From positions 147,169 to 211,168 of the IMG/VR virus record IMGVR_UViG_3300023181_000025: a DNA stretch of 64,000 nucleotides. One strand, given 5' to 3'. The notes beneath the pieces are model-generated. The model ran no database searches and was not told where the DNA came from. It worked only from the letters and a program-made list of their open reading frames with translations. The translations under genes were made by a program, and so were the position numbers. Within the stretch, counting starts at the first letter, position 1. Each line of letters begins with the position of its first letter. Shown piece after piece: positions 16,420 through 63,888 of this stretch.

Positions 16420-16454
16420 TTGACAAAAACCGCGAACAATGATTAATTACCTCC
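16420..16454 (+). promoter_or_regulatory. Representative sigma70-type early promoter with leaderless start; recurs dozens of times between 16.4 and 63.6 kb
   Basis: TTGACA, 17-nt spacer, AT-rich -10; ATG 35 nt after first T. Confidence 0.8.
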
Positions 16455-16730
16455 ATGACAGAGCAAAAAACTAAAGACGCTAGGGGCCGCAAGGTTGGTT
16501 CAACCGACACAGTAAACGTGCCCATTTCATTTTTGATTCAAAATAATTTTAAACTAATTCCTGTCCGCCGCAAGTGGGTGGAGCAGATTTGCGCCGCACT
16601 TAATATCGAAATTCCAGACATGGAAGAAAAGGTTAAGATTACCGTTCCTGCCCCGGAAGTGTTGGAAACCGGAGAAAGCCCAGACGATCCAAAGGTGGCC
16701 GTCGCATTTATTTGTGAAGAATTGGATTGA
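16455..16730 (+). CDS. Hypothetical protein with AT-hook-like RGRK motif
   Basis: ARGRKVGS. Confidence 0.65.
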   Translation: MTEQKTKDARGRKVGSTDTVNVPISFLIQNNFKLIPVRRKWVEQICAALNIEIPDMEEKVKITVPAPEVLETGESPDDPKVAVAFICEELD

Positions 16731-16761
16731 CCTTTAGCTAAAAACCATTATTATCACTCAC

Positions 16762-17754
16762 ATGACGACACACACAGACGATTATTTTGAAGGGGTTGTA
16801 GGCCAAACGCACGTAAAGAAAGCATTGTCTTTCTATCTTGATAAGCATCGCCACAATGGATCGGTAATGCCAAACATTTTGCTTACTGGTTTCCGTGGAG
16901 ACGGTAAGAGTCACCTTGCACGTAAGATTGCTCGGAACTTTCCAGACCTTTCCCAGCCTGAGAAAAAGCATAAGGCATTTTATTCTTTTAATGGAGCGTC
17001 CATTAAGAATATTTCAGTTTTTCTTGAGGGGATTTGGACCAAGCTTCAGTCAGAAAATGATTATCTAACGATTTTCATTGATGAGGCCCACGGCCTTCCG
17101 AAATCGGTCCAAACAGCCATGCTTTCCATTATGGAAAAAACCCGTAATCATATGACCAAATATGTTCATAACGATATGGAATATAATTTCGATTTCCGGA
17201 AAGTTAATTTTATTCTTGCGACTACGGAAGACGACGGAATTTTCCATGCTCTTAAAGATCGCCTTACCACCTTTGGGCTTCAGCCATACACTCGAAAAGA
17301 GCTTGGCGAAATTGTCCAAATGGTTGTAGATGATAGGTGTGAAATTAGCGATTCAATGCTAACTAAAATTTCTCATTACATCCGCCGCAATGCTCGCGCG
17401 GCAAATGAAATGGCGAACCATATTCTTTCATTCGGTTGTCCGGTTTTTGAAGATGAGCATTTTGAAGCCCTTAAAGAAAACCTCCACCTTTTGGATTACG
17501 GGATTAATGAAGATGAGCTTCGGGTTCTTGAAGCTTTGAGTGAAGGGGAGTTGAGTCTTGGTCAACTCGCTTGTCGTGTGGGAAGGCCCAGCAGAGCGAT
17601 GCAACACGAACTAGAGCCATACCTTATTTCCCTTAAGCTTATGGAAATTGATGGGAAGCGCCGTATTACTCAAAAAGGAAAGGATTTTCTCGCAAAAGTG
17701 AATGGGACTTTTGAAGAAAAGGTAAAGACTAAAGACAGCGGCGAGCAACTTTAA
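16762..17754 (+). CDS. ruvB: RuvB-like Holliday-junction AAA+ ATPase
   Basis: VVGQ..VK, G..G.GKS, IFIDEAH.L, LATT, L.DR, C-terminal wHTH EPYL...R.IT.KG. Confidence 0.8.
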   Translation: MTTHTDDYFEGVVGQTHVKKALSFYLDKHRHNGSVMPNILLTGFRGDGKSHLARKIARNFPDLSQPEKKHKAFYSFNGASIKNISVFLEGIWTKLQSENDYLTIFIDEAHGLPKSVQTAMLSIMEKTRNHMTKYVHNDMEYNFDFRKVNFILATTEDDGIFHALKDRLTTFGLQPYTRKELGEIVQMVVDDRCEISDSMLTKISHYIRRNARAANEMANHILSFGCPVFEDEHFEALKENLHLLDYGINEDELRVLEALSEGELSLGQLACRVGRPSRAMQHELEPYLISLKLMEIDGKRRITQKGKDFLAKVNGTFEEKVKTKDSGEQL

Positions 17755-17833
17755 TTTTTCTTCGTCATTATTTTCTATTGACAAACTCAAAATTTTAGCT
17801 ATTCTCTAAACACAATACGAAAGACAAAACAAC

Positions 17834-18208
17834 ATGAACACAACTGATACAATTAACAAAATTAAGAAGGCCGGGCATCGAGTTAATATTTCTCACCTGC
17901 GCCGACTCAAGAACAATAAGCATCGAAGCGCCCTCGTCCGCGTTCGCGATGTTAAACCGGACAAGGACGGGAATAAGCCCATGATTAGTCCAACTGGCGG
18001 CGCAACCCATATGCGAATCGAATTCAATGATGGAACCATTCGCGAAGCAAAGTTCGGCGTGTGGCACGAAGACTCTTACGAAAAAGAAACGGGTCGCTAT
18101 AAGTGTCTTGCGCATCTTGCGGAAACCGTGCCCGACAAGTTCGCGGACCTTTTTGAAGACATTAAGGAATCTTCATTGGAAAATGAAAGCTGGGTGATTA
18201 AGCTCTAA
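17834..18208 (+). CDS. Hypothetical protein
   Basis: Own promoter and A/C-rich leader; GGAT motif. Confidence 0.7.
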   Translation: MNTTDTINKIKKAGHRVNISHLRRLKNNKHRSALVRVRDVKPDKDGNKPMISPTGGATHMRIEFNDGTIREAKFGVWHEDSYEKETGRYKCLAHLAETVPDKFADLFEDIKESSLENESWVIKL

Positions 18209-18233
18209 AAAACAAACAAACAATAACAATAAT

Positions 18234-18527
18234 ATGACTGATACAAACACTACTACGAATTCTCCCACAAACAAGCGGGTTCGCACCGCCAAGCCAAAGG
18301 CTATCAAGCGTGGCCGTCCGCCACGGGTTGACTGGAGCAAGTTCACGCTTCTCTGGAAGTCCCATACCGACAGTGAAATTGCTCATAAGGCGAATTGCAC
18401 CGTTGTCAACGTCTTTCTTCGTCGCAAGCGGCTTATCTCCGCTGCGGCAGACGACAAGAAGGCTTTTTATAGTTGCTCCAAGCCAGCTTATACGAAGTCC
18501 CGCTTTCTAAAGGAAAAGGCAAACTAA
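18234..18527 (+). CDS. Basic DNA-binding protein (AT-hook plus HTH-like)
   Basis: KRGRPP; DW...DSEIA...C...V..RR. Confidence 0.6.
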   Translation: MTDTNTTTNSPTNKRVRTAKPKAIKRGRPPRVDWSKFTLLWKSHTDSEIAHKANCTVVNVFLRRKRLISAAADDKKAFYSCSKPAYTKSRFLKEKAN

Positions 18528-18565
18528 TATCTCGTGAGTCAAAACGATTGATGTTTGATCTTTAT

Positions 18566-18594
18566 AAGAGCGCCCAAATCGGGCGCTCTTTTTT
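18566..18594 (+). terminator. Rho-independent terminator
   Basis: AAGAGCGCCC-AAATC-GGGCGCTCTT plus T tract. Confidence 0.9.
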
Positions 18595-18673
18595 ATTGAC
18601 TAACGCCAGACATTAGCTATCATCAACTTGTGGGTAAGGAACTCCATAAACAAAAAAAAAAAAAAACAACAAT

Positions 18674-18892
18674 ATGATTCGCAATTTTATCAAAGAATTC
18701 AAGAAGCGTCGTTTTCAAAAACGTGCATATGCTATCCATAAGCTCAATAGCGCGCGCCTTCTAATGAATCACATTAACGAAGTGACTCATTCAGGTCATT
18801 ACACCTTCGTAGCAAACCGGGAAAGGGTATTGAATAATCCCAAGCCAAAGGTCGCAAAACCAGTTTGGTATGCAAAATATTACGATCAATAA
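18674..18892 (+). CDS. Hypothetical protein
   Basis: Promoter at 18596 and poly-A leader. Confidence 0.6.
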   Translation: MIRNFIKEFKKRRFQKRAYAIHKLNSARLLMNHINEVTHSGHYTFVANRERVLNNPKPKVAKPVWYAKYYDQ

Positions 18893-18900
18893 ATAAGTAT

Positions 18901-19440: not shown

Positions 19441-19500
19441 AATATTGTCAGAATATTGTTGACTAAAAGTCCTTAATACATACACTCATAAACGTAACAC

Positions 19501-22333: not shown

Positions 22334-22636
22334 ATGAAGATAGTCACGCGACAAGAATTTATAGATTGGATTAGGTCTAATCATGGGAATAAGAAAATCA
22401 ATATGTCTGAAAATAAGGCGGGCGATCCTTGTGGGTGCCTTATGGTTCAATATGCTCGGGATAAATTTCCTAAAGACTTCTTTAAAAAAGGAAGCTGCGG
22501 TTATGAATCATGGACAAATCAGGGCCGAACAATAGCTAAATTAGATTGTGATATTTGTGAAATTGTTCCCGGTTGGAAATGGGCAAATATTAAAACCTTC
22601 CAGCAGGTAAAAAAGATCTTGACAGAAACGCGCTAA
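22334..22636 (+). CDS. Paralog family B member
   Basis: TRQEFIDW...CGCLMVQY. Confidence 0.8.
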   Translation: MKIVTRQEFIDWIRSNHGNKKINMSENKAGDPCGCLMVQYARDKFPKDFFKKGSCGYESWTNQGRTIAKLDCDICEIVPGWKWANIKTFQQVKKILTETR

Positions 22637-22653
22637 TAAGTAAACGTATACCT

Positions 22654-22917
22654 ATGAAAGTAACAGAAGGAAAGACAGAAGTTCAAACGATCACCTCCGC
22701 TCTTAAGGATATTAAGGCGGGCGAAGTAGTTAGGTTTTCATACGATTCGATTGAAGAAGCCTTTAAGGCTGATTTGTTCTATATGAAGCTGGAAACTCCC
22801 GGCGCAAATCCGGGCCGCGTTCGGCTTGTAAACATTACGTCTGGAAAAGTAACGGAATATGATGACATTCATCGTGTCGTGACTCATAAGGCGGAACTCC
22901 ATCTTTTTAACCTATAA
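22654..22917 (+). CDS. Hypothetical protein
   Basis: Leaderless after promoter at 22619. Confidence 0.7.
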   Translation: MKVTEGKTEVQTITSALKDIKAGEVVRFSYDSIEEAFKADLFYMKLETPGANPGRVRLVNITSGKVTEYDDIHRVVTHKAELHLFNL

Positions 22918-23569: not shown

Positions 23570-23962
23570 ATGAAAACTAAGCAAGAGATCATCGAAGAAA
23601 CGGCAAATTATTACAATCTGAGTAATCGGGCAGTTACTCTTTCAGGTAAATGTAAATATTCAACCAGTGACGGAAGACAATGTGCCGTAGGTAGGTGCTT
23701 TACTGATAAAGAGGCTGACAGCTTTTGTGATTTTGACGGGCCGGTGAGTTTTGTAAACTCAACCCTAAAAGTCAACGCAAATAAAGAGCTTGATGATATT
23801 TTGAAAGAGGAATATCGCGGCCATTCGATTATTTTTTGGATGGATCTTCAAAGTTTTCATGATACACAGGAGAACTGGAATGATGATGGAATTTCTGAGG
23901 TTGGGCTGAAAGAAAAAGCAGAACTTCTTGAAAAGTATGTTGACAAACAAGAGGGAAACTAA
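23570..23962 (+). CDS. Paralog family A member
   Basis: IIEETA.YYN..NR; CAVGRC; FWMDLQSFHD. Confidence 0.85.
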   Translation: MKTKQEIIEETANYYNLSNRAVTLSGKCKYSTSDGRQCAVGRCFTDKEADSFCDFDGPVSFVNSTLKVNANKELDDILKEEYRGHSIIFWMDLQSFHDTQENWNDDGISEVGLKEKAELLEKYVDKQEGN

Positions 23963-23974
23963 TACTTTATTCAC

Positions 23975-24334
23975 ATGACCAAGCAATCAATTATTGAAGA
24001 GACCGCCGCCTATTACAATTTGGGAAATCGTTCGGTTTGCCCTAAAAAGGGCGGGTGCCTCTATTTGAACCCCGAGGGAAAAATGTGTGCTTTTGGTAGG
24101 TGCATGACGGAGGAAGGTCTGGACGCTTATAAGAATTCGGGCGATTACGTTAGAGCCTTAAGTGTTGGAGATAGCGTTGACCATCTTTTGCTGGCAGATT
24201 ATAAGGGCCATTCTGTAGAGTTTTGGACCGACATCCAAATGTTCCATGACATGGAAAATCATTGGACTGAGACCGGCCTTTCCTCTAAAGGCGAAGAATT
24301 TAAGAAAAAACTTCTCAAAAAGTATGTTGACTAA
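23975..24334 (+). CDS. Paralog family A member
   Basis: CAFGRCMT; FWTDIQMFHD. Confidence 0.85.
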   Translation: MTKQSIIEETAAYYNLGNRSVCPKKGGCLYLNPEGKMCAFGRCMTEEGLDAYKNSGDYVRALSVGDSVDHLLLADYKGHSVEFWTDIQMFHDMENHWTETGLSSKGEEFKKKLLKKYVD

Positions 24335-24450: not shown

Positions 24451-24499
24451 ATAAAGAGGTTGACAGGGAAAAGAAAAAACGATAGATTGTAAAAACAAA

Positions 24500-24573
24500 G
24501 GGGCGATAGCTTAACCGGTGAAAGCAGCGGTTTCATAAACCGTTGAGTGAGGGTTCGACCCCCTCTCGCCCTA
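24500..24573 (+). tRNA. tRNA with CAT anticodon, probably tRNA-Ile2 (lysidine-modified); elongator Met not excluded
   Basis: Cloverleaf GGGGCGA/TCGCCCT, GCGGT-TTCATAA-ACCGT, GAGGG-TTCGACC-CCCTC; no initiator features; tilS nearby; CCA not encoded. Confidence 0.92.
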
Positions 24574-24574
24574 C

Positions 24575-25099
24575 TTATAAAATTCTTTCAGGGTTGTGTA
24601 ATTCCATATGGCAATTAGAGCACAATAAATCACATTTGTCTATTTCTAGCAATAGAGAGGCCCAATTTGTATTGGAGAGTTTTCTAGAGTCCAGCTTAAA
24701 AGTTTTTTCTTTTGGATCTCTGTGATGGAAACACAGGGCGGAATAATTTTTATCGTATCCGCATATTTTGCATTTCCCGCCCTTCAAATCAACTAAAGTT
24801 TTCTTTCTGTCTAAAGAAACGAGTTTTTGACGTTCGTTATTCTTTCTATTTTGCTCTTGTTTATTATCTTTATAGAACTGCTTGCAACTACATTCGTTAG
24901 AGCAAAACTTTAGTTGATTCCCCTCTAATCTTTTGGAACACATTAAACAAAACGTATCGGGAGAATGAGTTTTTTTAGTATTTAATCCATGTTTTCTAAG
25001 CCAATACCTTATATTGGTTTGACTGCAATTAAGTTTAATTGCGATTTGATAAGTAGACATGCCTTGTTCAATTAATTCTTTTAATGTTTCATAGCTCAT
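24575..25099 (-). CDS. HTH + zinc finger + HNH endonuclease
   Basis: GMSTYQIA..L.CS...IRYWL; C..C...FCS..C; CKICGY...FHHRDP...LCSNCH..H. Confidence 0.9.
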   Translation of the reverse strand: MSYETLKELIEQGMSTYQIAIKLNCSQTNIRYWLRKHGLNTKKTHSPDTFCLMCSKRLEGNQLKFCSNECSCKQFYKDNKQEQNRKNNERQKLVSLDRKKTLVDLKGGKCKICGYDKNYSALCFHHRDPKEKTFKLDSRKLSNTNWASLLLEIDKCDLLCSNCHMELHNPERIL

Positions 25100-25192
25100 A
25101 AAGTTATTTACACAAAAAATATAAATTGTGAACTAGTATGTTTGACTTTTTTATTTCTTGACTTTTCTCCATAATTTTCAATACTGCCCCCC

Positions 25193-25834
25193 ATGATCAA
25201 ATTCATCCCCGGCACAATCCCCCATGATCCCGTTTTCATGATCAGCGGCGGCGTGGATAGCGTGGCGGCGGCCCACTGGCTAGCCACCAAGGCGCGCAAA
25301 AAGATTTCGGCTATCCACTTCAACCATAACGTCCAACCCGCGAACGAAGCAATGCAGACGGCGGTGTGCGAGCTTTGCGCGTCTCTTGACATTCCCCTTA
25401 TGATCGTGAAGAATACGACAGCTTGCAAACTGAATGAGGCCAGTCTTAGGCATTGGAGACTAACAGTTTTGAAAGGCATTAAGGGAAACTTTCTAAGTGC
25501 TCATCATGTAGGGGATGCAATTGAAAATTATTTAAACAACTGTTTGAAAGGCTGTCCAGAATATAAGCCAATTAAAGAAAAAACTGAATTCGATGGTTTT
25601 ACAATTTCCCACCCATTCCTTACCACTCGCAAGAGCGATTTCGAAAAATACGCAAGACAAAACAATCTAGACCAATTCATCTGCCCCGACCCCACTAACG
25701 CCGATACTTCCTTTAATCGAAACTGGATTAGAAAACTAATTAGCGAATCGGAAGATCGCGGCAAAGGGTTGGAAAAAGTAGTCTTAAAGAAATTTTACAA
25801 AAAGAGAATTGACATTGGCGGGGGATTTGAATAG
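25193..25834 (+). CDS. tilS: tRNA(Ile)-lysidine synthase, catalytic domain only
   Basis: SGGVDS PP-loop, HFNH, AHH..D..E, DPTN......RN.IR. Confidence 0.9.
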   Translation: MIKFIPGTIPHDPVFMISGGVDSVAAAHWLATKARKKISAIHFNHNVQPANEAMQTAVCELCASLDIPLMIVKNTTACKLNEASLRHWRLTVLKGIKGNFLSAHHVGDAIENYLNNCLKGCPEYKPIKEKTEFDGFTISHPFLTTRKSDFEKYARQNNLDQFICPDPTNADTSFNRNWIRKLISESEDRGKGLEKVVLKKFYKKRIDIGGGFE

Positions 25835-26808: not shown

Positions 26809-26842
26809 TTGACTTTTTCTATAATTTACCCATATTTATAAC

Positions 26843-27067
26843 ATGAAATACCAAGTTTTTGAAAACGATATCGCCTGTTCTGAAATTGCCAAAAGCCTGC
26901 GAGATCCCGCATGGCAAAAGGATACATTTGATAATTTCGCGGATGCTGTAGAATTTGCAGAACAATGGCTTGGCTTCTATGGCTTGGGGCATGAAAAATA
27001 TTACCCTAATCAAAAAATAAATTATTATCCCGAAGATGGGTGCACAATTGAAGTCCGCGAAATTTAA
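26843..27067 (+). CDS. Hypothetical protein
   Basis: Leaderless after promoter at 26809. Confidence 0.65.
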   Translation: MKYQVFENDIACSEIAKSLRDPAWQKDTFDNFADAVEFAEQWLGFYGLGHEKYYPNQKINYYPEDGCTIEVREI

Positions 27068-29765: not shown

Positions 29766-30289
29766 TCCATAGTTGATCCATGAAGGAATTTAATCTCGCC
29801 CAACTTAGATATGCTGAGGAAGTATGTTTTAAGGACGATTTCATTAAGCTATTCAACAAATACGCTTTGAATTCGTTAGAAGAGAACTTGGGACTATATC
29901 ACTGGTATTATATTTGCAGCGATTATCAAGGCAAAGTATTGAATTGGATTTTCCACTGGTCCCGCGCTGACATGAAAAATGCGATGGGTGGGATCATCGA
30001 AGGAATGCTCACCGATCTAATTGGAGATTACAAAGGATAAAATGAAAAGTTTAATCTTAGGGTTTATTTTGGGGTTCATGATGGTTTTTGGCGTGTGGTG
30101 GCTCAAAACTCCGAATCCCCCATTGGTTTGCTTTCTTCTGGCGGTAGCCTCTATCATTTACCCTCTCAAGGTAAAGATAGATGAGTTAAGCACCAAAATT
30201 TATGAATTCGACAAAGATTGCGGCGGAATTCTTGTAGATTTCCTGAAATGTGTTGAGGGTAAAAAGGATGTTGACAATCGGAAGAAATA
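29746..30289 (+). repeat. 19-bp direct repeat TTGACAATCGGAAGAAATA (29746-29764 and 30271-30289) flanking a two-gene cassette
   Basis: Exact match; both copies are promoter -35/spacer and encode C-terminal DNRK. Confidence 0.9.
29780..30040 (+). CDS. Hypothetical protein
   Basis: Leaderless after promoter at 29746. Confidence 0.65.
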   Translation: MKEFNLAQLRYAEEVCFKDDFIKLFNKYALNSLEENLGLYHWYYICSDYQGKVLNWIFHWSRADMKNAMGGIIEGMLTDLIGDYKG

Positions 30290-37050: not shown

Positions 37051-37416
37051 ATGAAATACTCCAAAATTCAAATCATCGAAGAAATCGCGGCAAAGTATAA
37101 TAGTGACAATCGTTCTTATAAATCTATGGCGGGGTATGAAGTGTGCCAATACGATTTTCGTGGGAAACAATGTGCCGTAGGTCATTGCATGACAGAAGAA
37201 GGGCGGGATTTGGCCATGAGACAGTTATGGGAAGGCGTAGAGGATTTGGGAATTCGTCTTTTGGAGGGTAGCCTGAAGGAAGAATACAAGGGGCACGAAT
37301 TGGAGTTTTGGAGCGACCTTCAACGTTTTCATGATACAACCCAATATTGGAGATCCGAAGGACTTTCTCTTCGTGGTGAATTTTACAAACAAGAACTACT
37401 AATTAAATATGCTTGA
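37051..37416 (+). CDS. Paralog family A member
   Basis: CAVGHCMT; FWSDLQRFHD. Confidence 0.85.
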   Translation: MKYSKIQIIEEIAAKYNSDNRSYKSMAGYEVCQYDFRGKQCAVGHCMTEEGRDLAMRQLWEGVEDLGIRLLEGSLKEEYKGHELEFWSDLQRFHDTTQYWRSEGLSLRGEFYKQELLIKYA

Positions 37417-38733: not shown

Positions 38734-39111
38734 ATGAACGTTAAAAGGAAAACAGATGTTATCCGCGAAACTGCGGAATTTTACAATCTTAATAATAGAG
38801 GTGTGGATGGTAATGGCCATTACCATTATCTAACCGATGATAAAAAGTGCGGCGTAGGTCGCTGCATGACGGATGAAGCCCTACAAAGGTCTCTGGAAGG
38901 ATGGCCGTCTATTGGATCTTTTGTCCAGTGGCAGATTGGCAGTGAATCTTATTTAAAAATTTTTAAACCCCAATATAAAATTGATGATATTCAATTTTGG
39001 GAAGACATTCAGGGCTTTCACGACGTAGATGACTATTGGAATGAAACTGGTCTTTCGGCAGAAGGTAAGAAAAAATATCAACGCCTTCTTGACAAATACC
39101 TCAATCAATAA
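38734..39111 (+). CDS. Paralog family A member
   Basis: CGVGRCMT; FWEDIQGFHD. Confidence 0.85.
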   Translation: MNVKRKTDVIRETAEFYNLNNRGVDGNGHYHYLTDDKKCGVGRCMTDEALQRSLEGWPSIGSFVQWQIGSESYLKIFKPQYKIDDIQFWEDIQGFHDVDDYWNETGLSAEGKKKYQRLLDKYLNQ

Positions 39112-39908: not shown

Positions 39909-40322
39909 ATGAAAACTAAAATTAAAGTCATTAACGAAACTGCGGCACATTACAATTCTAATAATCGTGGAAACGATGGATTGAGCTGTGTGTATGATGC
40001 GGGTGATGGGAACAGGTGTGCGGTAGGTAGGTGCATGACGCCCGAGGCATTGGAAAAGTCTTTGTTTGTTTTGCATAGTAATTATGCTTGGGGAAGCGTA
40101 AGAAACATTGAGGCCAACATTGAAAACCATTTGTTTCAATTCCCAGAAGGAGCGAAAAGTTTTCTTGATCTTCTTAGGGAAGAATACCAAATTGATGATC
40201 TTAAATTTTGGAAAGATCTCCAGCAATTTCATGATGAGGGGTCTAATTGGGACGACCAAGGCCTTTCCGAGCGAGGGAAAAAGGCTTATAAGATTCTGCT
40301 TGACCAATATAAGGGTCAATGA
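39909..40322 (+). CDS. Paralog family A member
   Basis: CAVGRCMT; FWKDLQQFHD. Confidence 0.85.
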   Translation: MKTKIKVINETAAHYNSNNRGNDGLSCVYDAGDGNRCAVGRCMTPEALEKSLFVLHSNYAWGSVRNIEANIENHLFQFPEGAKSFLDLLREEYQIDDLKFWKDLQQFHDEGSNWDDQGLSERGKKAYKILLDQYKGQ

Positions 40323-40899: not shown

Positions 40900-40981
40900 G
40901 GTCCGTTGCCCAAATTGGTAAAGGGAACATCTTTAAACGGTGTCGCGTAACAGCTTCTCGGTTCGAGTCCGAGGCGGACTA
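40900..40981 (+). tRNA. tRNA-Leu(TAA)
   Basis: GGTCCGT/GCGGACT acceptor, ACATC-TTTAAAC-GGTGT, long variable arm, CTCGG-TTCGAGT-CCGAG; CCA not encoded. Confidence 0.92.
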
Positions 40982-41596
40982 CTTATTTTTACCTTTGTTT
41001 TTGCCGCAATAAGTTTCCGTAAGGGAATGGCAATTAGGACAAAGAAATCGAAGGTTTGACAGTTCATTGTTGGAGTTGTCCCCATCTATATGGTCCAAGT
41101 GAAGAGAGAGTTTAATTCCTCGCCATTCTGTAAGGAAACACTCATCACATATATAAGGAATAAGACCGTATTTAAGAATTTTTCGTTTTAGATTTGTGCT
41201 ATGGAGAGTTCCATCTTTAACAAAAGATTCCTCTATAGATTTTTCTGGTGCATATATATTTGTCTTATTTTTTAAATGCCCCTGACCAGTAAAATGGGAG
41301 GTGTCCAAGCACAGTGATTTTATTCTATTATAAAAAATTCTATAATTGCCTCCCCTAGGAACAATGTCACATTTCTTTAAAACCTCGGCGACTGAAAAAC
41401 TTTCAGCAACATATTGAGAAAATAATTCATTATCAACTTTTGCCGTTGAATGTTTGGATTTAATTTTATCCTTGCTGGTCTTTCCTTTGCACCAGTCCAT
41501 AACAGTTGAGCGATTTACCCCTGTTTGTCTGGATATTTCACAGTAATTTAAACCCTTTTCCCTTAATTTTAATACATTTTCAAATAATTCATTCAT
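40979..41596 (-). CDS. HTH + HNH endonuclease
   Basis: GLNY.EISR.TGVNRSTV..W; C..C...W....L.LHLDHIDG...NN...NLR.LCPNCHS.T. Confidence 0.92.
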   Translation of the reverse strand: MNELFENVLKLREKGLNYCEISRQTGVNRSTVMDWCKGKTSKDKIKSKHSTAKVDNELFSQYVAESFSVAEVLKKCDIVPRGGNYRIFYNRIKSLCLDTSHFTGQGHLKNKTNIYAPEKSIEESFVKDGTLHSTNLKRKILKYGLIPYICDECFLTEWRGIKLSLHLDHIDGDNSNNELSNLRFLCPNCHSLTETYCGKNKGKNK

Positions 41597-42562: not shown

Positions 42563-42931
42563 ATGACTAAGCAAGCAATTATCGAAGAAACTGCCGCATT
42601 TTACAATAGCGGTAATCGCGGGCAAACCTCTATTGGCTATATTTATGTAAATAAATATGGTAACAAATGTGGGGTAGGTCGCTGTATGACAGATGACGGC
42701 ATCGCAGTGTTTGGGGGATTTGGGGATGATGTTATTGAACTTGAAAAAAAGGTTAAGGATTCCTATAGCGGCCTTGATGATATTTTGAAAGAGGAATATC
42801 GCGGCCATTCGGTTGATTTCTGGGCGGACATCCAAGGGTTTCATGACAATAGCGAGAATTGGGATAAAGAAGGAATTTCGTTTCGGGGTTTAGCATCTAA
42901 AGCATTCCTTCTTGAAAAATATTCCAGTTGA
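42563..42931 (+). CDS. Paralog family A member
   Basis: CGVGRCMT; FWADIQGFHD. Confidence 0.85.
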   Translation: MTKQAIIEETAAFYNSGNRGQTSIGYIYVNKYGNKCGVGRCMTDDGIAVFGGFGDDVIELEKKVKDSYSGLDDILKEEYRGHSVDFWADIQGFHDNSENWDKEGISFRGLASKAFLLEKYSS

Positions 42932-42961
42932 CACTTAGCAAAATCCTAATACCTTCATTTT

Positions 42962-43345
42962 ATGAACAAAGAATCAATTATCGAAGAGACGGCGAATTAT
43001 TACAATTCGGAGAATCGTTCACTTAATAGTGGTGGGACCGGATGCTCGTATCTTGGCTCAAATGGAACTTGGTGCGGTTTCTCTAGGTGTTGCAAAAATG
43101 ACGCCAAGACTATAGAGTCTCTTGAGGCTATGGATGATGTAGTAGGAACCCTGAATTGTTATGAACTTGATAAAAATGAGATTTCGTATGAAGAACTTCT
43201 CCAAGATCAATACAAAGGACACGAATTGGAATTTTGGAGAGACGTTCAGTTTCTCCATGACGGAAAAGAAAATTGGAATAAGTCTGGTCTGAGTGAAAAG
43301 GGGCAAAAATTTAAGGATAGGCTTATTGGAAAGTGGCGAGAGTAA
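42962..43345 (+). CDS. Paralog family A member
   Basis: CGFSRC; FWRDVQFLHD. Confidence 0.85.
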   Translation: MNKESIIEETANYYNSENRSLNSGGTGCSYLGSNGTWCGFSRCCKNDAKTIESLEAMDDVVGTLNCYELDKNEISYEELLQDQYKGHELEFWRDVQFLHDGKENWNKSGLSEKGQKFKDRLIGKWRE

Positions 43346-49609: not shown

Positions 49610-49637
49610 AAAATAATTATTGACAGTCCTTCAATTA

Positions 49638-49875
49638 ATGAAAAGTTTAATCTTAGGATTTATTTTGGGGTTCATGATGGTTTTTGGCGTATGGTGGCTT
49701 GAGACTCCAAATCCCCCATTAGTTTGCTTTCTTTTGGCGGTAGCCTCTATCATTTACCCTCTCAAGGTAAAGATAGATGAGTTAAGCACCAAAATTTATG
49801 AATTCGACAAAGATTGCGGCGGAATTCTTGTAGATTTCCTGAAATGTGTTGAGGGTAAAAAGGATGTTGACAATC
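49638..49875 (+). repeat. 238-bp dispersed repeat (other copy 30042-30279)
   Basis: 8 mismatches by hand count, all in the first ~100 bp; ends in TTGACAATC. Confidence 0.95.
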
Positions 49876-56110: not shown

Positions 56111-56470
56111 ATGGGATATACTCACTACTTTGAACAAACGGGCGGAACCATTCCGCAAGATAAATGGGACGAACTGCTGGAAGCCGTTGGGCCAATCTTG
56201 AGAGATCATGCGGAAATCATCTGCTGCAATTACGATGAGCCCGAAGGAAGCCCAATCGCTGATGAAAACGAAATCATTTTTAACGGCAAAGGCGAAGACG
56301 GACACGAAACATTTGTTTTGACTCGCGAAGCCAGCGGTGAATTTGAATTTTGTAAAACGGATCACAAGCCCTATGATAAAGTTGTGGTGGAGGTTTTGCA
56401 ACAAGTCAACAAAATTTGCCCTGAATATTATAATCTTGATAGTGACGGCGGATCTGACATTTTCCAATAG
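56111..56470 (+). CDS. Conserved hypothetical phage protein
   Basis: MGYTHY...FNG....HETF...FCKT..KPYD.VV. Confidence 0.8.
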   Translation: MGYTHYFEQTGGTIPQDKWDELLEAVGPILRDHAEIICCNYDEPEGSPIADENEIIFNGKGEDGHETFVLTREASGEFEFCKTDHKPYDKVVVEVLQQVNKICPEYYNLDSDGGSDIFQ

Positions 56471-58484: not shown

Positions 58485-58532
58485 TAAAAAAAGAGTTGAC
58501 CCGCGCCGGGTTATTAACTAATGTCTTTTTAG

Positions 58533-58865
58533 ATGAAAACAACGCCAATCTTTTCTGATTCAATTTTTGGATACTATCTCAGCCAGCATAGCGAGGGCGG
58601 TCGGAAACAAATTGATTCTATTTTTTGCTATACTAAGGGTGACGGGGGATTCCTCCGCGCCATTTATTACAAAACAAAAAAACGCTCTACCCGGACAGAA
58701 TCGCGAAAACAAATTTATTTTGTTCCAAACGAATTAGCGGACCCGAAACTAATCAAAGCAGAATTTACCCGCGCCATGCAATTTTTTTCCGCAAAGGATG
58801 GTATGCTTTGGGGAGCCTATTACGAACTTACCAAGCTGGGAAAATTTGTGGAAATTAATGTTTGA
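58533..58865 (+). CDS. Hypothetical protein
   Basis: Own TTGACC promoter. Confidence 0.6.
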   Translation: MKTTPIFSDSIFGYYLSQHSEGGRKQIDSIFCYTKGDGGFLRAIYYKTKKRSTRTESRKQIYFVPNELADPKLIKAEFTRAMQFFSAKDGMLWGAYYELTKLGKFVEINV

Positions 58866-59999: not shown

Positions 60000-60077
60000 A
60001 AACGAGACAACGGGTTGTCTTAAAATGCGGGATTGTTTTTTCTTGTCATTCGCAAATTATCTAATAATCTTGTCTTT

Positions 60078-60287
60078 ATGAGAAACAAATCGAAAAACAA
60101 ATTGATTCGCGTTAGGGTTTGCCCGGACGTAATGGCGACCGATTTCAAGGGGGAATGGCACACTGGCTGGCGGAAGCCCTTTTCACAAACAATTGCTTTT
60201 TATTATAAAAAAGCTTGGTATTCTCTTCACGAGCACAATATTGTGAAAATGAATTCAAAAGAAAAAGCCCTACAGGGTGTGAATTAA
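60078..60287 (+). CDS. Hypothetical protein
   Basis: Leaderless after TTGTCA promoter. Confidence 0.55.
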   Translation: MRNKSKNKLIRVRVCPDVMATDFKGEWHTGWRKPFSQTIAFYYKKAWYSLHEHNIVKMNSKEKALQGVN

Positions 60288-60333
60288 AAAAATAATCCTT
60301 GCAAAATAATCCCTATTAACTAAATTCATCCAT

Positions 60334-60603
60334 ATGGAAACACAAGTTACCTCAATCGAAATTTCCCCCGTTGTTCAAAAACGCGCATATGACAAGCGGT
60401 TTTATGTCGAATCAACTTTGAAGGCGAAAAATGGGCATTCTTGCACCTATCAAATTTCCAGCCAAAAGAAAAAGGACTTGCCCGCCGCCATCGAACGCGC
60501 TAAAACTTCAGTCGCGGGAGGCGGAATGTTTTTCACTGATACCGGGATGGTGATCTCAAAATGGGAAATGGGAAAAAAGGGCTTGCAACCCGCCGCAAAT
60601 TGA
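60334..60603 (+). CDS. Hypothetical protein
   Basis: Leaderless after TTGCAA promoter. Confidence 0.65.
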   Translation: METQVTSIEISPVVQKRAYDKRFYVESTLKAKNGHSCTYQISSQKKKDLPAAIERAKTSVAGGGMFFTDTGMVISKWEMGKKGLQPAAN

Positions 60604-60751
60604 TTGGCCCGCTGGAGCTTTCCAAGCATAACGATTATAACGCGGAGTTAATCGCCCGCCCCGCTCTAAAAGGCCGAAAGGGGGAAAGGCCAACAATTTT
60701 CTTGCAACTCTAAATAAATCACTTACCTTTCATTCATAACCAACTAACACC

Positions 60752-61024
60752 ATGGCCAGCAAACGTCTCCGCTCAACTCTTACCCGCCGTCAACGTGTCA
60801 CTCATATTCAAAATGAACGCGCATTGAAGGAATATTTTAACTTGCTTCGCGAGGCCCGCCTTTCCAATCCGGTGCCCGCTCGCAAGGTTTTTGAATCTGT
60901 GAAAGCAATGCAGCTTCATCCCGCCGAAAAAATCAAAGTCGCAAAGGACGGGAAACTGTTTTTCCAAGCGCGCGTAAAGGGGAAATTCCAGCCCCGGCAA
61001 ATTGTGGACCTTAGCGCCCATTAA
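60752..61024 (+). CDS. Basic hypothetical protein
   Basis: TTGCAA promoter; A/C-rich leader. Confidence 0.65.
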   Translation: MASKRLRSTLTRRQRVTHIQNERALKEYFNLLREARLSNPVPARKVFESVKAMQLHPAEKIKVAKDGKLFFQARVKGKFQPRQIVDLSAH

Positions 61025-61246
61025 AATATAAACAAATAAATTCCCGCGCCCCTAAAAGCATTTGAGTTTTCAATGGGGCCGGGCAACTTAATTATTATGT
61101 TTATTATCCATATGGAACTTATTTTTGCTTTTATTTTTATCCTTCTTTTTGTCAAATCTTATTGCTCAGCTCAAGACTGATCACCCCGAAAAACGCTTAG
61201 TTTTCTTTCTTGTCATTTAACTAAAACTAACCCATCTTTCGCTCGT

Positions 61247-61546
61247 ATGAAAAAACAAATCATCGCAATTGCAATCCTCGCTGAATTTCTCGCCACCTAC
61301 CCGGTGCAAGTCATTCCGGAAGGAACTCACGAACTCATCGTTATTTCCGACAAAGGGGAACTTCGGATTGATGCCCGCAAGGATACCGCCGCCGAGTCTC
61401 TGATTGATTTCCTTGCCTCTGATGGCTTTGACAAGGAAGTGCTGCAATCGGATCTGAAGGTGACAATCTCGGTTTCCGACTATGCGGATACGGTGCCCGA
61501 TGCTCCAGAAGATGAGCAAGAGACCGAGATTGATGAGGCGGTCTGA
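61247..61546 (+). CDS. Acidic hypothetical protein
   Basis: D/E-rich; GC-richer codons; own promoter. Confidence 0.7.
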   Translation: MKKQIIAIAILAEFLATYPVQVIPEGTHELIVISDKGELRIDARKDTAAESLIDFLASDGFDKEVLQSDLKVTISVSDYADTVPDAPEDEQETEIDEAV

Positions 61547-61731
61547 AATTCCCCTAGGAAATAAAAACAATACAAAAAATAAAAATGGCCCGCGCCCCAC
61601 CCTGAAAAGAAAAGGTGATTGGACAAGGTTTTATTTTGGGAATTAAAAATTGAATAGAAACTCTAACCTTTGGGAAGGGAATAAAAATGGTTAACTATCA
61701 TAAGAACTAATAAACATATCTAAAGTATATT

Positions 61732-61771
61732 TCCCGCGCTTCTTTAACTAGGGGCGCGGGATTTCTGTTTT
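61732..61771 (+). terminator. Rho-independent terminator
   Basis: TCCCGCGCTT/GGGCGCGGGA stem followed by TTTCTGTTTT. Confidence 0.7.
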
Positions 61772-61827
61772 AAAAATGCTTAGTTTTTTGTCTAGACGCA
61801 GGCACGTTATTAGCTAATAGTTCCCGC

Positions 61828-62196
61828 ATGGATCGCAAAACTATTGAATTGCTTTTTCGGATCGAATGCCGTCAACACAAGATTGAAGGTGTTAAGCTGG
61901 CTTGGCGCGATAAAAAGCAAAGCCCCCATGGATTGGCTTGCGCCAATGGGCCGGAAAGAACCATTTACTTTTACCCGCTCGCAACCCTATTAGGAGAAAA
62001 AACAATTGAAAAAATCATGCGCCATGAATTGGCCCATATTTTGGATCATGACGAGCGCGGCCAGTATGAAAATGAAAATGGCAGATTCAATGCGCATGGT
62101 AAAAATTGGCGCAAATATTGTAAACAGCTTGGATGCCCGCCTACGGCAAAACTTGTTCTAACGCAAGAGGAAAATAGAAGGCTCGCCGTCGCCTGA
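61828..62196 (+). CDS. SprT-like zinc metalloprotease (short)
   Basis: IMRHELAH...HGKNWR..C..LG. Confidence 0.85.
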   Translation: MDRKTIELLFRIECRQHKIEGVKLAWRDKKQSPHGLACANGPERTIYFYPLATLLGEKTIEKIMRHELAHILDHDERGQYENENGRFNAHGKNWRKYCKQLGCPPTAKLVLTQEENRRLAVA

Positions 62197-62250
62197 AAAA
62201 TGCGGAGTTTTTTCACTTGGATTAAATAAAACCTATTCTAGTTTCTAGTC

Positions 62251-62736
62251 ATGTCATTGCCAACCCCTGCTAGCGTTAAATTTATCCTTCGCGAAGAGCC
62301 ATTAGCTTATTGCCCGCGCGAGCTTAAGCTAGACACGCCGGAAAGGATAAATGATTTCCTTAAAACCGTTGTGGCCACAGATGGATCATTCGAGGCGGGT
62401 AAGGAAAATTTGATTTTGATTTGTTTGGATGCTCGTTTGAATTTCACGGGATATTCTATTCTATCGGTTGGAACATTGACAGAGACCGCCGCGCATCCTC
62501 GCGACATTTTCCGCGCCGCGATACTGGCAAATGCATGCTATTTCATTTTGGCTCACAATCACCCAAGCGGGGAAGTAAGCCCTAGCCGGGCAGATGAGCA
62601 AATGACTAGAAAGGTTGACGAGGCCGCTGCAATCATGGGCATTCGTTTTTTGGATCATGTCATTTTTTCTACTGGCTACCCTACGCCCGGAAAATTGCCA
62701 TATTATTCCTTCAGGGAAGGCGGATTCATTCGTTAA
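62251..62736 (+). CDS. RadC-like JAB/MPN domain protein
   Basis: E....I.LD...GTL......PR.IF...AHNHPSG...PS.AD...LDHVI. Confidence 0.92.
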   Translation: MSLPTPASVKFILREEPLAYCPRELKLDTPERINDFLKTVVATDGSFEAGKENLILICLDARLNFTGYSILSVGTLTETAAHPRDIFRAAILANACYFILAHNHPSGEVSPSRADEQMTRKVDEAAAIMGIRFLDHVIFSTGYPTPGKLPYYSFREGGFIR

Positions 62737-62802
62737 AAATGCGGAATTTATTTCGATTCTTTTCTTTCCTTTGTTTTAGATAAAAGCCATATTGGTCACG
62801 TA

Positions 62803-63021
62803 ATGAAAACGCAAGAGAACATGAAACACACGCCGGGGCCTTGGAATTACGGAATCGCATCCGAATGTATTATTACTCCCCAAGGTCATGAGATTGCTAG
62901 TTTAGCAGATTCAGACTCTACTGAAAAAGAAACCAATGCCCGCCTCATCGCAGCGGCTCCGGTTGCGCGGAAAAATCGCCATCGCCAAGCAATACGAAGA
63001 TATCTGCGATTGGCTCTATAG
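62803..63021 (+). CDS. HTPGPW/NARLIAAAP-type phage protein, likely chimeric 3' end
   Basis: KHTPGPW...NARLIAAAP, then abrupt GC rise. Confidence 0.7.
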   Translation: MKTQENMKHTPGPWNYGIASECIITPQGHEIASLADSDSTEKETNARLIAAAPVARKNRHRQAIRRYLRLAL

Positions 63022-63141
63022 GGAGCGCATCGCCCCCGTCATTGAGTGCTGGTAAAACCCCGCCTGATGAGATCCCCGGCACGGGATCGAAACGCCTCCG
63101 GGCGTCGCGGCATGCAAACCAACTGCCCACCTAATCCCCCT

Positions 63142-63357
63142 ATGAAACACGCGCAAGCAATCGTATTTCCCGCCCGTCGCCACAATCTTAACCGGCGCGT
63201 GCGCTCATCAAGCGTTGAAACCCTTAAGACTCTGGCACTCGTCACAATGGCTGTGCTAGCTCTTGCGGGGATCATCGTGGCAGATAACTACAATCCACCC
63301 GCGCCAGATATGAGCAAGGCCCCGGCATGCGTGAGAGAATTGCTTTTGATTAAATAA
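63142..63357 (+). CDS. Small membrane protein on GC-rich patch
   Basis: Basic N-terminus plus TM helix. Confidence 0.5.
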   Translation: MKHAQAIVFPARRHNLNRRVRSSSVETLKTLALVTMAVLALAGIIVADNYNPPAPDMSKAPACVRELLLIK

Positions 63358-63367
63358 TTATTCCGAT

Positions 63368-63592
63368 ATGAAAATTACCGATATGAAAACACGCCCCACA
63401 AAAGAACAAATCGAAATCCTAGCTGCAAAAGCTTCGGACCCGGAACCCGTATGGGATTTTGTCGGATCTCTCCCCTTCGGATCAACCCTGCCCGACAATC
63501 TTGCAAACCTAGCTATGGATGCACGTTTGTATGGATGGGATAAAAGCATTGTGGACGCAATTCGCGAGGGAATCAAAATGGCGGTTTATTAA
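63368..63592 (+). CDS. Hypothetical protein
   Basis: NL.MDARLY.W....V.AI..GI. Confidence 0.7.
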   Translation: MKITDMKTRPTKEQIEILAAKASDPEPVWDFVGSLPFGSTLPDNLANLAMDARLYGWDKSIVDAIREGIKMAVY

Positions 63593-63636
63593 ATTATAAG
63601 TTGACCGGCGCGGGAAATCCAATTAGTTTCTCCCTA

Positions 63637-63888
63637 ATGAGTGCAACCCAAACGATTCCAGAAAGCGAAACCATCGAATGTGAAGGCGTGAAGTTTTATT
63701 TTTTGGATTTGATGGAAGATGATAGCCGCAACTTTATTCTATACGTCTTGCTAGACGGGGAGTGGGTCGCGGCTGATTATGTCTGCCCATTCTACTGCCG
63801 GGATATGACTCTCAATTTTCTTGCGACCTATCTTAAGCAAGTTGGCGCGCTTTCCGTTAGCGTGGAGGATTTCGGGCCGGACCAATAA
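63637..63888 (+). CDS. Hypothetical protein
   Basis: Leaderless after promoter at 63601. Confidence 0.65.
   Translation: MSATQTIPESETIECEGVKFYFLDLMEDDSRNFILYVLLDGEWVAADYVCPFYCRDMTLNFLATYLKQVGALSVSVEDFGPDQ

What the first reader, a model, noticed from the sequence alone, without database searches (positions are those of the whole stretch)
16420..63637. Early region made of leaderless promoter-gene cassettes
Seen: in more than 20 hand-checked cases the ATG lies 34-36 nt after the first T of TTGAC. Examples: 16420/16455, 16727/16762, 22619/22654, 23940/23975, 25158/25193, 29746/29780, 31472/31507, 42528/42563, 45019/45054, 52049/52084, 57747/57782. That is the expected +1 for a 6-17-6-6 sigma70 promoter. 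Internal genes show no Shine-Dalgarno motif, only AATAT- or CAA-rich leaders. The -35 box is often embedded in the last codons of the previous gene, explaining frequent ...VD/LD/LT C-termini. Inference: large-scale leaderless translation, plus possible titration of host RNA polymerase.
Basis: partly seen in the sequence, partly recalled or inferred. Interest (0 to 1): 0.6.

Follow-up and report, generated by a model that had tools for sequence, protein, structure and literature searches.

The report
Phage early promoters fused to start codons
In the small-gene region of an uncultured 211-kb phage from leaf litter, about a third of the genes have a textbook bacterial promoter placed so that transcription should begin on the ATG itself; the genome has no ribosome-binding (Shine-Dalgarno) sites, and the layout is strongly supported by sequence and by relatives but not yet shown with RNA data.

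Summary
In the window, 37 ORF-opening ATGs lie 34-37 nt after the first T of TTGAC, against 3.5 expected (Poisson p about 3e-25). TTGAC occurs 142 times on the + strand and 50 on the - strand.

The architecture is TTGACA, a 16-17 nt spacer, TAnnnT, then 6-7 C-rich nt ending in a pyrimidine, then ATG. That puts the A of ATG at the expected +1.

In nearly all cases this ATG is the first possible start of its ORF. Homologues align from residues 1-5.

Five of six related metagenomic contigs (AAA protein 30-60% identical) keep the same spacing before the orthologous AAA-ATPase gene, although the spacer sequence differs.

The same promoter precedes tRNA genes, so it is a promoter and not a translation signal.

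The whole genome lacks Shine-Dalgarno enrichment. Internal genes carry A/T-rich leaders.

About 30% of genes in the region are such cassettes; the rest follow in short operons. No RNA data exist, so transcription starts are inferred.

RNA polymerase titration is unsupported. The host is unknown.

Verdict: a probable large-scale leaderless early programme, a new variant of a known kind.

The parts
16420..16730 (+). cassette: TTGACA 16420, ATG 16455 (35), 91 aa; homologues in L010 and L012 also have a cassette
16727..17754 (+). cassette: TTGACC 16727 (holds the TGA stop of the upstream gene), ATG 16762 (35), 330-aa RuvB-like AAA ATPase
22619..22917 (+). cassette: TTGACA, ATG 22654 (35), 87 aa
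23940..24334 (+). cassette: TTGACA-N17-TACTTT, ATG 23975 (35), 119 aa (paralogue family, phrog_31716)
24460..24574 (+). same promoter type (TTGACA-N17-TAGATT, 24460-24488) ending 11 nt before tRNA(CAT) 24500-24574: control showing the motif is a promoter
25158..25834 (+). cassette: TTGACT, ATG 25193 (35), 213-aa PP-loop ATPase (TilS/QueC-like)
26809..27067 (+). cassette: TTGACT, ATG 26843 (34), 74 aa
28777..29275 (+). cassette: TTGACA, ATG 28811 (34), 154 aa
29746..30040 (+). cassette: TTGACA, ATG 29780 (34), 86 aa
30271..30532 (+). cassette: TTGACA (promoter near-duplicate of the one at 29746), ATG 30305 (34), 75 aa
30821..31184 (+). cassette: TTGACA, ATG 30855 (34), 109 aa
31171..31451 (+). 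cassette: TTGACG, ATG 31206 (35), 81 aa
31472..31809 (+). cassette: TTGACA-N17-TAGATT-ATCCCC-ATG 31507 (35), 100 aa
32248..32781 (+). cassette: TTGACA, ATG 32284 (36), 165 aa
35592..35790 (+). cassette: TTGACA, ATG 35626 (34), 54 aa
36677..37049 (+). cassette: TTGACT, ATG 36714 (37), 111 aa
41972..42267 (+). cassette: TTGACT, ATG 42010 (38), 85 aa
42528..42931 (+). cassette: TTGACA-N17-TATTTT, ATG 42563 (35), 122 aa
42928..43345 (+). cassette: TTGACA (holds the upstream TGA stop), ATG 42962 (34), 127 aa
45019..45632 (+). cassette: TTGACA-N17-TAATTT-ACACCC-ATG 45054 (35), 192 aa
46081..46309 (+). cassette: TTGACA, ATG 46118 (37), 63 aa
46383..46841 (+). cassette: TTGACA, ATG 46419 (36), 140 aa
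47757..48090 (+). cassette: TTGACA, ATG 47791 (34), 99 aa
48677..49609 (+). cassette: TTGACT (holds the upstream TGA stop), ATG 48713 (36), 298 aa
49886..50123 (+). cassette: TTGACA, ATG 49923 (37), 66 aa
50112..50461 (+). cassette: TTGACA, ATG 50147 (35), 104 aa
50815..50996 (+). cassette: TTGACA, ATG 50850 (35), 48 aa
52049..52284 (+). cassette: TTGACA-N16-TACAAT, ATG 52084 (35), 66 aa
52829..53388 (+). cassette: TTGACA, ATG 52867 (38), 173 aa
53582..53986 (+). cassette: TTGACT, ATG 53618 (36), 122 aa
54282..54489 (+). cassette: TTGACA-N16-CATAAT, ATG 54316 (34), 57 aa
55438..55729 (+). cassette: TTGACA, ATG 55472 (34), 85 aa
55743..56097 (+). cassette: TTGACA, ATG 55777 (34), 106 aa
56496..56719 (+). 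cassette: TTGACA-N17-AATAAT, ATG 56531 (35), 62 aa
57451..57701 (+). cassette: TTGACA, ATG 57486 (35), 71 aa
57747..58225 (+). cassette: TTGACT, ATG 57782 (35), 147 aa (phrog_1106, function unknown)
58496..58865 (+). cassette: TTGACC, ATG 58533 (37), 110 aa
58862..59081 (+). cassette: TTGACA (holds the upstream TGA stop), ATG 58896 (34), 61 aa
60043..60287 (+). variant cassette: TTGTCA-N16-TAATCT, 7 nt, ATG 60078, 69 aa
60299..60603 (+). variant cassette: TTGCAA-N16-TAAATT, 7 nt, ATG 60334, 89 aa
61210..61546 (+). variant cassette: TTGTCA-N17-CATCTT, 8 nt, ATG 61247, 99 aa
63601..63888 (+). cassette: TTGACC, ATG 63637 (36), 83 aa; last gene before the contig end and its terminator-like hairpin at 63914-63932

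Best explanation
The window is the last 64 kb of a complete, 211,168-bp uncultured tailed phage from leaf litter. The phage has no detectable RNA polymerase of its own and so must use the host enzyme. From about 16 kb to the end, the + strand carries roughly 120 small, mostly unknown genes arranged in short operons.

About every third gene is headed by a housekeeping-sigma promoter: an A/T-rich stretch, TTGACA, a 16-17 nt spacer with an A-tract, TAnnnT, then a 6-7 nt C-rich discriminator ending in C or T. It sits so that the A of the ATG is the predicted +1.

I infer that the host RNA polymerase holoenzyme starts on the A. The resulting mRNA would begin with AUG and be translated without any leader, presumably by direct binding of a 70S ribosome with initiator tRNA to the 5'-terminal AUG, as in known leaderless systems.

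Downstream genes of each unit are translated from short A/T-rich leaders without Shine-Dalgarno sites, or by stop-start coupling. Promoters overlap the 3' end of the preceding gene and terminators are not enriched, so transcripts are probably nested.

Shown: the motif, its spacing and statistics, start-codon placement, conservation in relatives, and genome-wide lack of Shine-Dalgarno sites. Inferred: promoter activity, the exact +1, leaderless translation, and early timing.
For: Spacing and statistics:
- The ATG peak at 34-37 nt after TTGAC has Poisson p = 3e-25.
- Aligned on the -10 box, 19 ORF-opening ATGs lie exactly 6 nt after it and 12 lie 7 nt after it, against about 1 per other distance.
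- Of 78 promoter-like sites outside gene bodies, 36 predict a 5' UTR of 3 nt or less.
- 52 of 368 genes pass an anchor test that gives 0-9 at shifted anchors.

Start-site context:
- The base before the ATG is C or T in 91% of cassettes, the preferred pyrimidine/purine start pair.
- Positions -6..-1 are 35% C and 27% A in cassettes, against 12% C and 48% A before other genes. So the sequence before a cassette ATG does not look like this genome's translation leaders.

Start-codon placement:
- The ATG is the first ATG, GTG or TTG after an in-frame stop 3-40 nt upstream in nearly all cases.
- In the AAA protein the conserved YFEGVxGQ block begins 4-8 residues after the Met, and the next Met is at codon 35.

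Comparison with relatives:
- The orthologous AAA gene keeps TTGAC(A/T) 34-36 nt before its ATG in L010, L012, L013, L020 and L022 (60-30% protein identity), with unrelated spacer sequence.
- L012, L013 and L020 show the same offset peak, with 9-16 cassettes in 15-21 kb.
- Homologous genes switch between cassette and internal context while keeping the same N-terminus.

Promoter identity:
- The same promoter precedes tRNA genes, ending 4-13 nt before the mature 5' end.
- No phage RNA polymerase was found.
- One of the two weak sigma-like ORFs (genome 71466-71972) itself has a cassette.
Against: - There is no RNA evidence of any kind. Only three DNA metagenome runs hold the sequence.
- The host is unknown, so neither recognition of TTGACA/TAnnnT by its primary sigma factor nor its ability to translate leaderless mRNA can be checked.
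- Many -10 boxes are imperfect (CATTCT, AAACAT, CACACT).
- Offsets range from 34 to 38, so some transcripts would carry 1-3 nt leaders.
- Without terminators (22 found, 21.3 expected), the same genes also sit inside longer transcripts and may be translated there.
- Weak folding of the first 30-50 nt does not separate cassette genes from other genes.
Confidence: 0.7

Rival explanations
1. The promoters are real, but the tight spacing is only a by-product of genome compaction. In a genome that needs no ribosome-binding site, a promoter can be squeezed into the 10-45 nt between two genes. The genes would then be translated mainly as internal cistrons of read-through transcripts.
For: Upstream ORFs end inside the promoter in 20 of 53 cassettes. 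Terminators are not enriched. Homologous genes work equally in internal context.
Against: Compaction alone predicts a minimum distance, not a sharp mode at exactly 6-7 nt after the -10 box with a pyrimidine/A pair at -1/+1. Many cassettes have spare intergenic space (gaps of 40-766 nt) yet keep the same spacing. The spacing is conserved in relatives at 30-60% identity. The sequence before cassette ATGs is C-rich, unlike the A-rich leaders used by internal genes.
Confidence: 0.12
2. Transcription starts a few nucleotides away from the A, giving either short leaders of 4-10 nt or starts inside the first codons. Translation would then begin at a downstream in-frame start.
For: Offsets vary from 34 to 38 nt, and the -10 to ATG gap is 5-8 nt. 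Start-site choice depends on the discriminator sequence (own knowledge).
Against: The next in-frame Met or Val is usually 10-90 codons downstream. Homologues conserve residues from positions 1-8.
Confidence: 0.1
3. TTGAC...TAnnnT is not a host-sigma promoter. It could be the binding site of a phage regulator or phage sigma factor, or a recombination or module-shuffling signal that happens to flank gene starts.
For: The phage encodes two weak sigma70-region-2-like ORFs. Paralogue families and a 97%-identical 239-nt duplication show active shuffling in the region.
Against: The motif matches the canonical two-hexamer promoter in both boxes and in spacer length. It also precedes tRNA genes at a promoter-appropriate distance. 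It is strongly strand-specific, 142 against 50. Spacer sequences are not conserved, so it is not a repeat element.
Confidence: 0.05

Closest known systems
Thermus phage phiYS40 leaderless middle/late transcripts
   Same: A large lytic phage, low in GC, that makes most transcripts of a temporal class without a leader and depends on the host ribosome to translate 5'-terminal AUGs (review PMC3594737).
   Different: In phiYS40 the leaderless class is middle/late, and it is linked to raised IF2 and lowered IF3. By my recollection those promoters lack a -35 box. Here the cassettes have a strong TTGACA -35 and lie in the presumed early small-gene region. No IF3 or bS21 gene was found. The rest of this genome has no Shine-Dalgarno sites either.
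Leaderless genes of Actinobacteria and Deinococcus-Thermus (GeneMarkS-2 'group C'), and SigA-like leaderless promoters of Cluster O mycobacteriophages
   Same: A Pribnow box about 10 nt before the start codon, with +1 on the first base of the codon (PMC6028130; PMC4351075).
   Different: In those genomes the remaining genes use Shine-Dalgarno sites, and the phages have only two or three such promoters. Here there are 40-50 per genome, and internal genes use A/T-rich leaders without Shine-Dalgarno sites, which is the 'group B' trait typical of the Bacteroidota/FCB group.
Arrays of strong host-sigma early promoters in T4, T5 and SPO1-type phages
   Same: Dozens of near-consensus -35/-10 promoters on one strand in front of small genes of unknown, presumably host-takeover, function, with phage sigma-like factors for later classes (own knowledge; PMC2988021 is listed).
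   Different: Those phages use leaders with Shine-Dalgarno sites. The giant phages with mapped starts, AR9 and phiKZ, have 5' UTRs of 26 nt or more and no leaderless transcripts.
Bacteroidota expression signals (TTTG at -33, TAnnTTTG at -7, A-rich ribosome-binding region without Shine-Dalgarno)
   Same: No Shine-Dalgarno sites; gene starts are preceded by A-rich, G-poor sequence (PMC6028130 and PMC9723704).
   Different: TAnnTTTG is not enriched upstream of genes here: 26 flat hits, and 147 against 145 copies on the two strands. Leaderless mRNAs are only 5.5% in Flavobacterium psychrophilum.

Membership tests
Leaderless mRNA genes | -10 box ends about 6-7 nt before the start codon, so +1 falls on the first base of the codon | tested here: met
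   The gap is 6 nt in 30 genes, 7 in 15, 8 in 5 and 5 in 2, of 52 genes.
Leaderless mRNA genes | Start codon is AUG and is the first possible start of the ORF | tested here: met
   All cassette starts are ATG. There is no upstream in-frame ATG, GTG or TTG in nearly all, and an in-frame stop lies 3-40 nt upstream.
Leaderless mRNA genes | Mapped 5' triphosphate end coincides with the start codon | not testable with these tools
   Only DNA metagenome runs hold the sequence, and none is on record as RNA.
Leaderless mRNA genes | The protein is made from the 5'-terminal AUG | not testable with these tools
   Indirect support only: homologue N-termini align from residues 1-8.
Housekeeping sigma (sigma70/sigmaA) promoter | TTGACA-like -35, 16-18 nt spacer, TAnnnT -10 | tested here: met
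   TTGACA in 31 of 52; spacer 16 nt in 29, 17 in 19 and 18 in 4. In the 53 TTGAC-offset cassettes, A is 70% at -11 and T is 68% at -7. The full pattern occurs 19 times against 2.2 in shuffles.
Housekeeping sigma (sigma70/sigmaA) promoter | Drives genes regardless of type, non-coding ones included | tested here: met
   The same motif ends 4-13 nt before several tRNA genes, including window 24460-24488 before tRNA 24500.
Housekeeping sigma (sigma70/sigmaA) promoter | Transcribed by the host holoenzyme | not testable with these tools
   The host is unknown. No phage RNA polymerase was detected, which is consistent with use of the host enzyme.
phiYS40-type leaderless programme | Leaderless class driven by promoters without a -35 box in the middle/late class (the -35 point is from my recollection) | tested here: not met
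   The cassettes carry a strong -35 box. A separate motif without a -35 box, W-AGTGTAA-W, lies 11-23 nt before some structural genes and might be the analogue, but I followed it only partly.
phiYS40-type leaderless programme | Shift of host IF2/IF3 balance | not testable with these tools
   No phage IF3 or bS21 homologue was found. Host factors cannot be examined.
Bacteroidota-type promoters | TAnnTTTG -7 box upstream of genes | tested here: not met
   26 occurrences with a flat distribution upstream of 368 genes, and no strand bias.
Shine-Dalgarno-led initiation | GGAG, GAGG or AGGA enriched at -20..-4 | tested here: not met
   33 of 366 starts against 10% background. G falls to 7-14% upstream, although GGAG is common inside genes, with 751 sense-strand copies.
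T4-type promoter/stem-loop cassettes | Stem-loops or terminators flanking the promoter-gene modules | tested here: not met
   Terminator-like hairpins: 22 found against 21.3 expected in 44-64 kb.

The most novel reading that the evidence does not exclude
This phage and its uncultured relatives may run a translation programme that is wholly independent of Shine-Dalgarno pairing. Promoter-proximal genes would be leaderless, both the sigmaA-type early cassettes and possibly the AGTGTAA-type late genes with leaders of 0-12 nt. Internal genes would use A/U-rich leaders. The promoters are canonical and not Bacteroidota-type, so the host may be an ordinary Shine-Dalgarno-using bacterium. In that case the phage could favour its own messages by disabling or bypassing Shine-Dalgarno-dependent initiation after infection, a takeover mechanism at the level of the ribosome.
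Probability: 0.12. Interest if true: 0.8.

Novelty: new variant of a known kind. Interest (0 to 1): 0.55.

Why it matters
Leaderless mRNAs are known one at a time in phages (lambda cI, a few mycobacteriophage promoters) and as a middle/late class in Thermus phage phiYS40. Here 40-50 genes of one genome, about 30% of its small-gene region, appear to be built this way. The design is conserved across a clade of soil and litter phages whose genomes also lack Shine-Dalgarno sites.

If confirmed, three things follow:
- It gives a natural library of dozens of minimal promoter-ORF units for studying what makes a 5'-terminal AUG translatable.
- It shows that standard gene finders and RBS-based start prediction will mis-call such phages.
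- It raises the testable idea that the mode of translation initiation is part of host takeover.

Practically, the promoter-to-ATG rule fixes start codons for many tiny ORFs that would otherwise be doubtful.

Tried and rejected
- Megablast of 11 kb against cultured phages found nothing.
- tblastn of the DnaE-like polymerase and the large terminase gave only 25-31% hits to phages of mixed hosts.
- The search for related loci in viral contigs with the single AAA protein found nothing. The word search then gave 27 homologues.
- Host inference with the ribonucleotide reductase large subunit in genome contigs gave only 26-43% hits to metagenome bins of unrelated phyla. This was uninformative.
- RNA evidence: no run on record as RNA.
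- Read laying on 6000 bases of three DNA runs showed the same phage in two further leaf-litter samples. There were essentially no variants, so no test of selection on the boxes was possible.
- 5' mRNA folding: starts are weakly structured (-1.2 kcal/mol for 30 nt, against -3.0 at +60). Cassette and non-cassette genes do not differ, so the test does not discriminate.
- The Bacteroidota -7 motif is absent.
- Phage bS21, IF3, sigma region 4, T7-type RNA polymerase and the multisubunit RNA polymerase beta subunit were not found. The PF00940 search rang in no control genome, so that negative is weak.
- Intrinsic terminators between cassettes are not enriched.
- Pfam and PHROGs on about 25 proteins of the region returned mostly nothing.
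- RNA polymerase titration: I found no way to test it, and nothing supports it.
- No other genetic code was applied. The amber suppressor tRNA is only noted.
- The large representative protein search, structure prediction and complex prediction were not used, because the claim does not rest on them.

Full report
**What the window is.** The window is bases 147,169-211,168 of a 211,168-bp virus record. The two ends of the record overlap by about 132 nt with 2 mismatches, so the assembly is closed. GC content is about 38%. The sequence comes from a leaf-litter metagenome, and identical pieces occur in two further leaf-litter runs.

The genome encodes a large terminase, a DnaE-like DNA polymerase and ribonucleotide reductase. 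It also encodes a PIF1-type helicase and other enzymes, and 20 tRNAs. It is very distant from cultured phages. No phage RNA polymerase was detected. Two ORFs weakly resemble sigma70 region 2.

- TTGAC occurs 142 times on the + strand and 50 on the - strand of the window. ATG follows at offsets 34-37 in 44 + sites.
- Restricting to ATGs that open an ORF of at least 40 aa gives 37 at offsets 34-37, against 3.5 expected from all other offsets. Poisson p is 3e-25.
- Genome-wide, the cassettes concentrate at 170-211 kb, on the + strand only.
- Counted from gene starts, 52 of 368 genes have TTG-type -35 and A2/T6 -10 boxes with the -10 ending 5-8 nt before the ATG. Shifted anchors give 0-9.
- In the region from 16 kb on, this is 33-38 of about 124 genes, roughly 30%.

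**Anatomy.**
- An A/T-only stretch lies 4-6 nt before the -35 box.
- The -35 box is TTGACA, with A at the sixth position in 72%.
- The spacer is 16 nt (29 cases) or 17 nt (19 cases), with an A-tract in its middle.
- The -10 box is TAnnnT, with A at 70% at -11 and T at 68% at -7.
- A 6 nt (30 cases) or 7 nt (15 cases) discriminator follows. It is C-rich and ends in C or T in 91% of cases.
- Then comes ATG, usually followed by A.
- With the -10 box defined as -12 to -7, a 6-nt gap puts the A of the ATG at +1. This rests on established knowledge of promoter geometry.
- Of 78 promoter-like sites outside gene bodies, 36 predict a 5' UTR of 3 nt or less, and 19 predict exactly 0.

**These ATGs are the true starts.** In nearly every case the ATG is the first ATG, GTG or TTG after an in-frame stop 3-40 nt upstream. 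The next in-frame Met or Val is typically 10-90 codons downstream. For the RuvB-like AAA ATPase (16762-17754), an alignment of 12 homologues shows the conserved YFEGVxGQ block 4-8 residues after the Met. BLASTP of window proteins against ORFs of related contigs aligns the N-termini within 0-2 residues in most pairs.

**The motif is a promoter, not a translation signal.** The same TTGACA-N16/17-TAnnnT ends 4-13 nt before the mature 5' end of several tRNA genes. One example is window 24460-24488 before the tRNA at 24500. The six bases before cassette ATGs are 35% C and 27% A. Before other genes they are 12% C and 48% A. So they do not look like the leaders this genome otherwise uses.

**Comparative evidence.** The AAA protein has 27 metagenomic homologues. 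I fetched six contigs.
- In L010, L012, L013, L020 and L022 (60, 52, 54, 49 and 30% identity), the orthologous gene has TTGAC(A/T) 36, 34, 36, 34 and 34 nt before its ATG. The spacer sequences are unrelated.
- L012, L013 and L020 show the same offset peak, with 12, 9 and 16 cassettes in 15-21 kb.
- L021 (37% identity) lacks the pattern and has more Shine-Dalgarno-like starts, 10 of 32.
- Homologous genes are cassette-type in one genome and internal in another, with the same N-terminus. So promoters are gained and lost, but always land at the same distance.

**Translation signals elsewhere in the genome.** There is no Shine-Dalgarno enrichment anywhere: 33 of 366 starts against 10% background. 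G is depleted to 7-14% upstream. GGAG-type words are nevertheless common inside genes.

Internal genes follow the upstream stop by 1-20 nt and carry leaders of the AATATTAATAAT-ATG type. Terminator-like hairpins are not enriched. The upstream ORF ends inside the promoter in 20 of 53 cassettes, and in 8 its TGA stop is the TGA of T-TGA-C. Transcripts are therefore probably nested.

**Host.** The host is unresolved. A/T-rich leaders without Shine-Dalgarno sites recall the Bacteroidota/FCB 'group B'. However, the Bacteroidota TAnnTTTG box is absent, and the promoters are canonical. Leaderless mRNAs make up only 5.5% in a Flavobacterium. The phage tRNAs mostly read A/U-ending codons, which would fit a host of higher GC content; this is my inference. 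The ribonucleotide reductase search gave no usable clue.

**Comparison with what is known.**
- phiYS40 makes most middle/late transcripts leaderless.
- Cluster O mycobacteriophages have two or three SigA-like leaderless promoters.
- 'Group C' bacteria have a Pribnow box about 10 nt before leaderless starts, but use Shine-Dalgarno sites for other genes.
- The giant phages with mapped starts, AR9 and phiKZ, have no leaderless transcripts.
- Four literature searches found no description of this design.

I therefore rate it a new variant of a known kind. It has a full -35/-10 promoter, sits in the presumed early class, covers 40-50 genes, lies in a genome with no Shine-Dalgarno sites, and is conserved in a clade.

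**Limits.** No RNA or protein data exist for this phage, so promoter activity, the exact +1 and leaderless translation are inferences. 'Early' is by analogy with other large phages. Titration of RNA polymerase is unsupported. The operators' limits were kept: read laying was given 6000 letters, no other genetic code was applied, and the large protein search was not used.

Noticed in passing
genome 91899-91973 (outside the window); window 56111-56470: One of the 20 phage tRNAs has anticodon CTA, an amber suppressor. TAG ends only 18 of 368 genes and none in the 0-60 kb structural block. Two genes would extend by 183 and 82 codons if TAG were read through. No recoding was assumed.
   Followed up: partly
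window 24500-24574 and 25193-25834: A tRNA with anticodon CAT lies about 620 nt upstream of a PP-loop ATPase (Pfam ATP_bind_3, TilS/QueC-like). This may be a tRNA-Ile2 plus lysidine synthase pair for reading AUA.
   Followed up: no
genome 18140, 21444, 24202, 27314, 92175, 101178(-), 88847(-), 85429(-), 7680(-); window about 41614(-): A second promoter-like motif, W-AGTGTAA-W, mostly without a -35 box, lies 11-39 nt before structural genes, tRNAs and the minus-strand HNH gene. If WAGTGT acts as a -10 box, the leaders would be only 0-12 nt in about nine cases. It may be a middle/late promoter for the phage sigma-like ORFs.
   Followed up: partly
genome 10857-11543 and 71466-71972: Two ORFs weakly match Sigma70 region 2, at 21-23 bits, just under the Pfam cut-off. 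The second one itself has a TTGACA cassette 37 nt before its ATG.
   Followed up: partly
window 10009-11202: A 397-aa ORF with about 50% GC sits in surroundings of about 36% GC and has no Pfam match. It may be a recent acquisition.
   Followed up: no
window 23570-24334, 37051-37416, 38734-39111, 39909-40322, 42563-43345; also 22334, 28253, 31507, 32800, 55777; also 27293 and 32284: Several families of small paralogous genes occur in the region, one matching phrog_31716 and with conserved Cys-containing blocks. Members occur both as cassettes and as internal genes.
   Followed up: partly
window 30041-30279 and 49637-49875: A 239-nt direct repeat, 97% identical, duplicates an 80-82-aa gene. Each copy is followed by a cassette promoter.
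   Followed up: no
window 40900-40982 and 40979-41596(-): A minus-strand HTH plus HNH endonuclease gene abuts, and by its stop overlaps, the 3' end of tRNA-Leu(TAA). It looks like a homing-endonuclease insertion. A second minus-strand HTH gene lies at 24575-25099, next to the other tRNA.
   Followed up: partly
window 60000-64000: The last 4 kb are richer in GC (43-47%), use degenerate -35 boxes (TTGTCA, TTGCAA, TTGGAT) and include a RadC-like JAB-domain gene at 62251-62736. The contig ends overlap by about 132 nt.
   Followed up: partly
L021 (whole locus): The relative with 37% AAA identity lacks the cassette pattern and has Shine-Dalgarno-like sequences before 10 of 32 genes, including GGAG before its AAA gene. 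The design may be confined to one subclade.
   Followed up: partly
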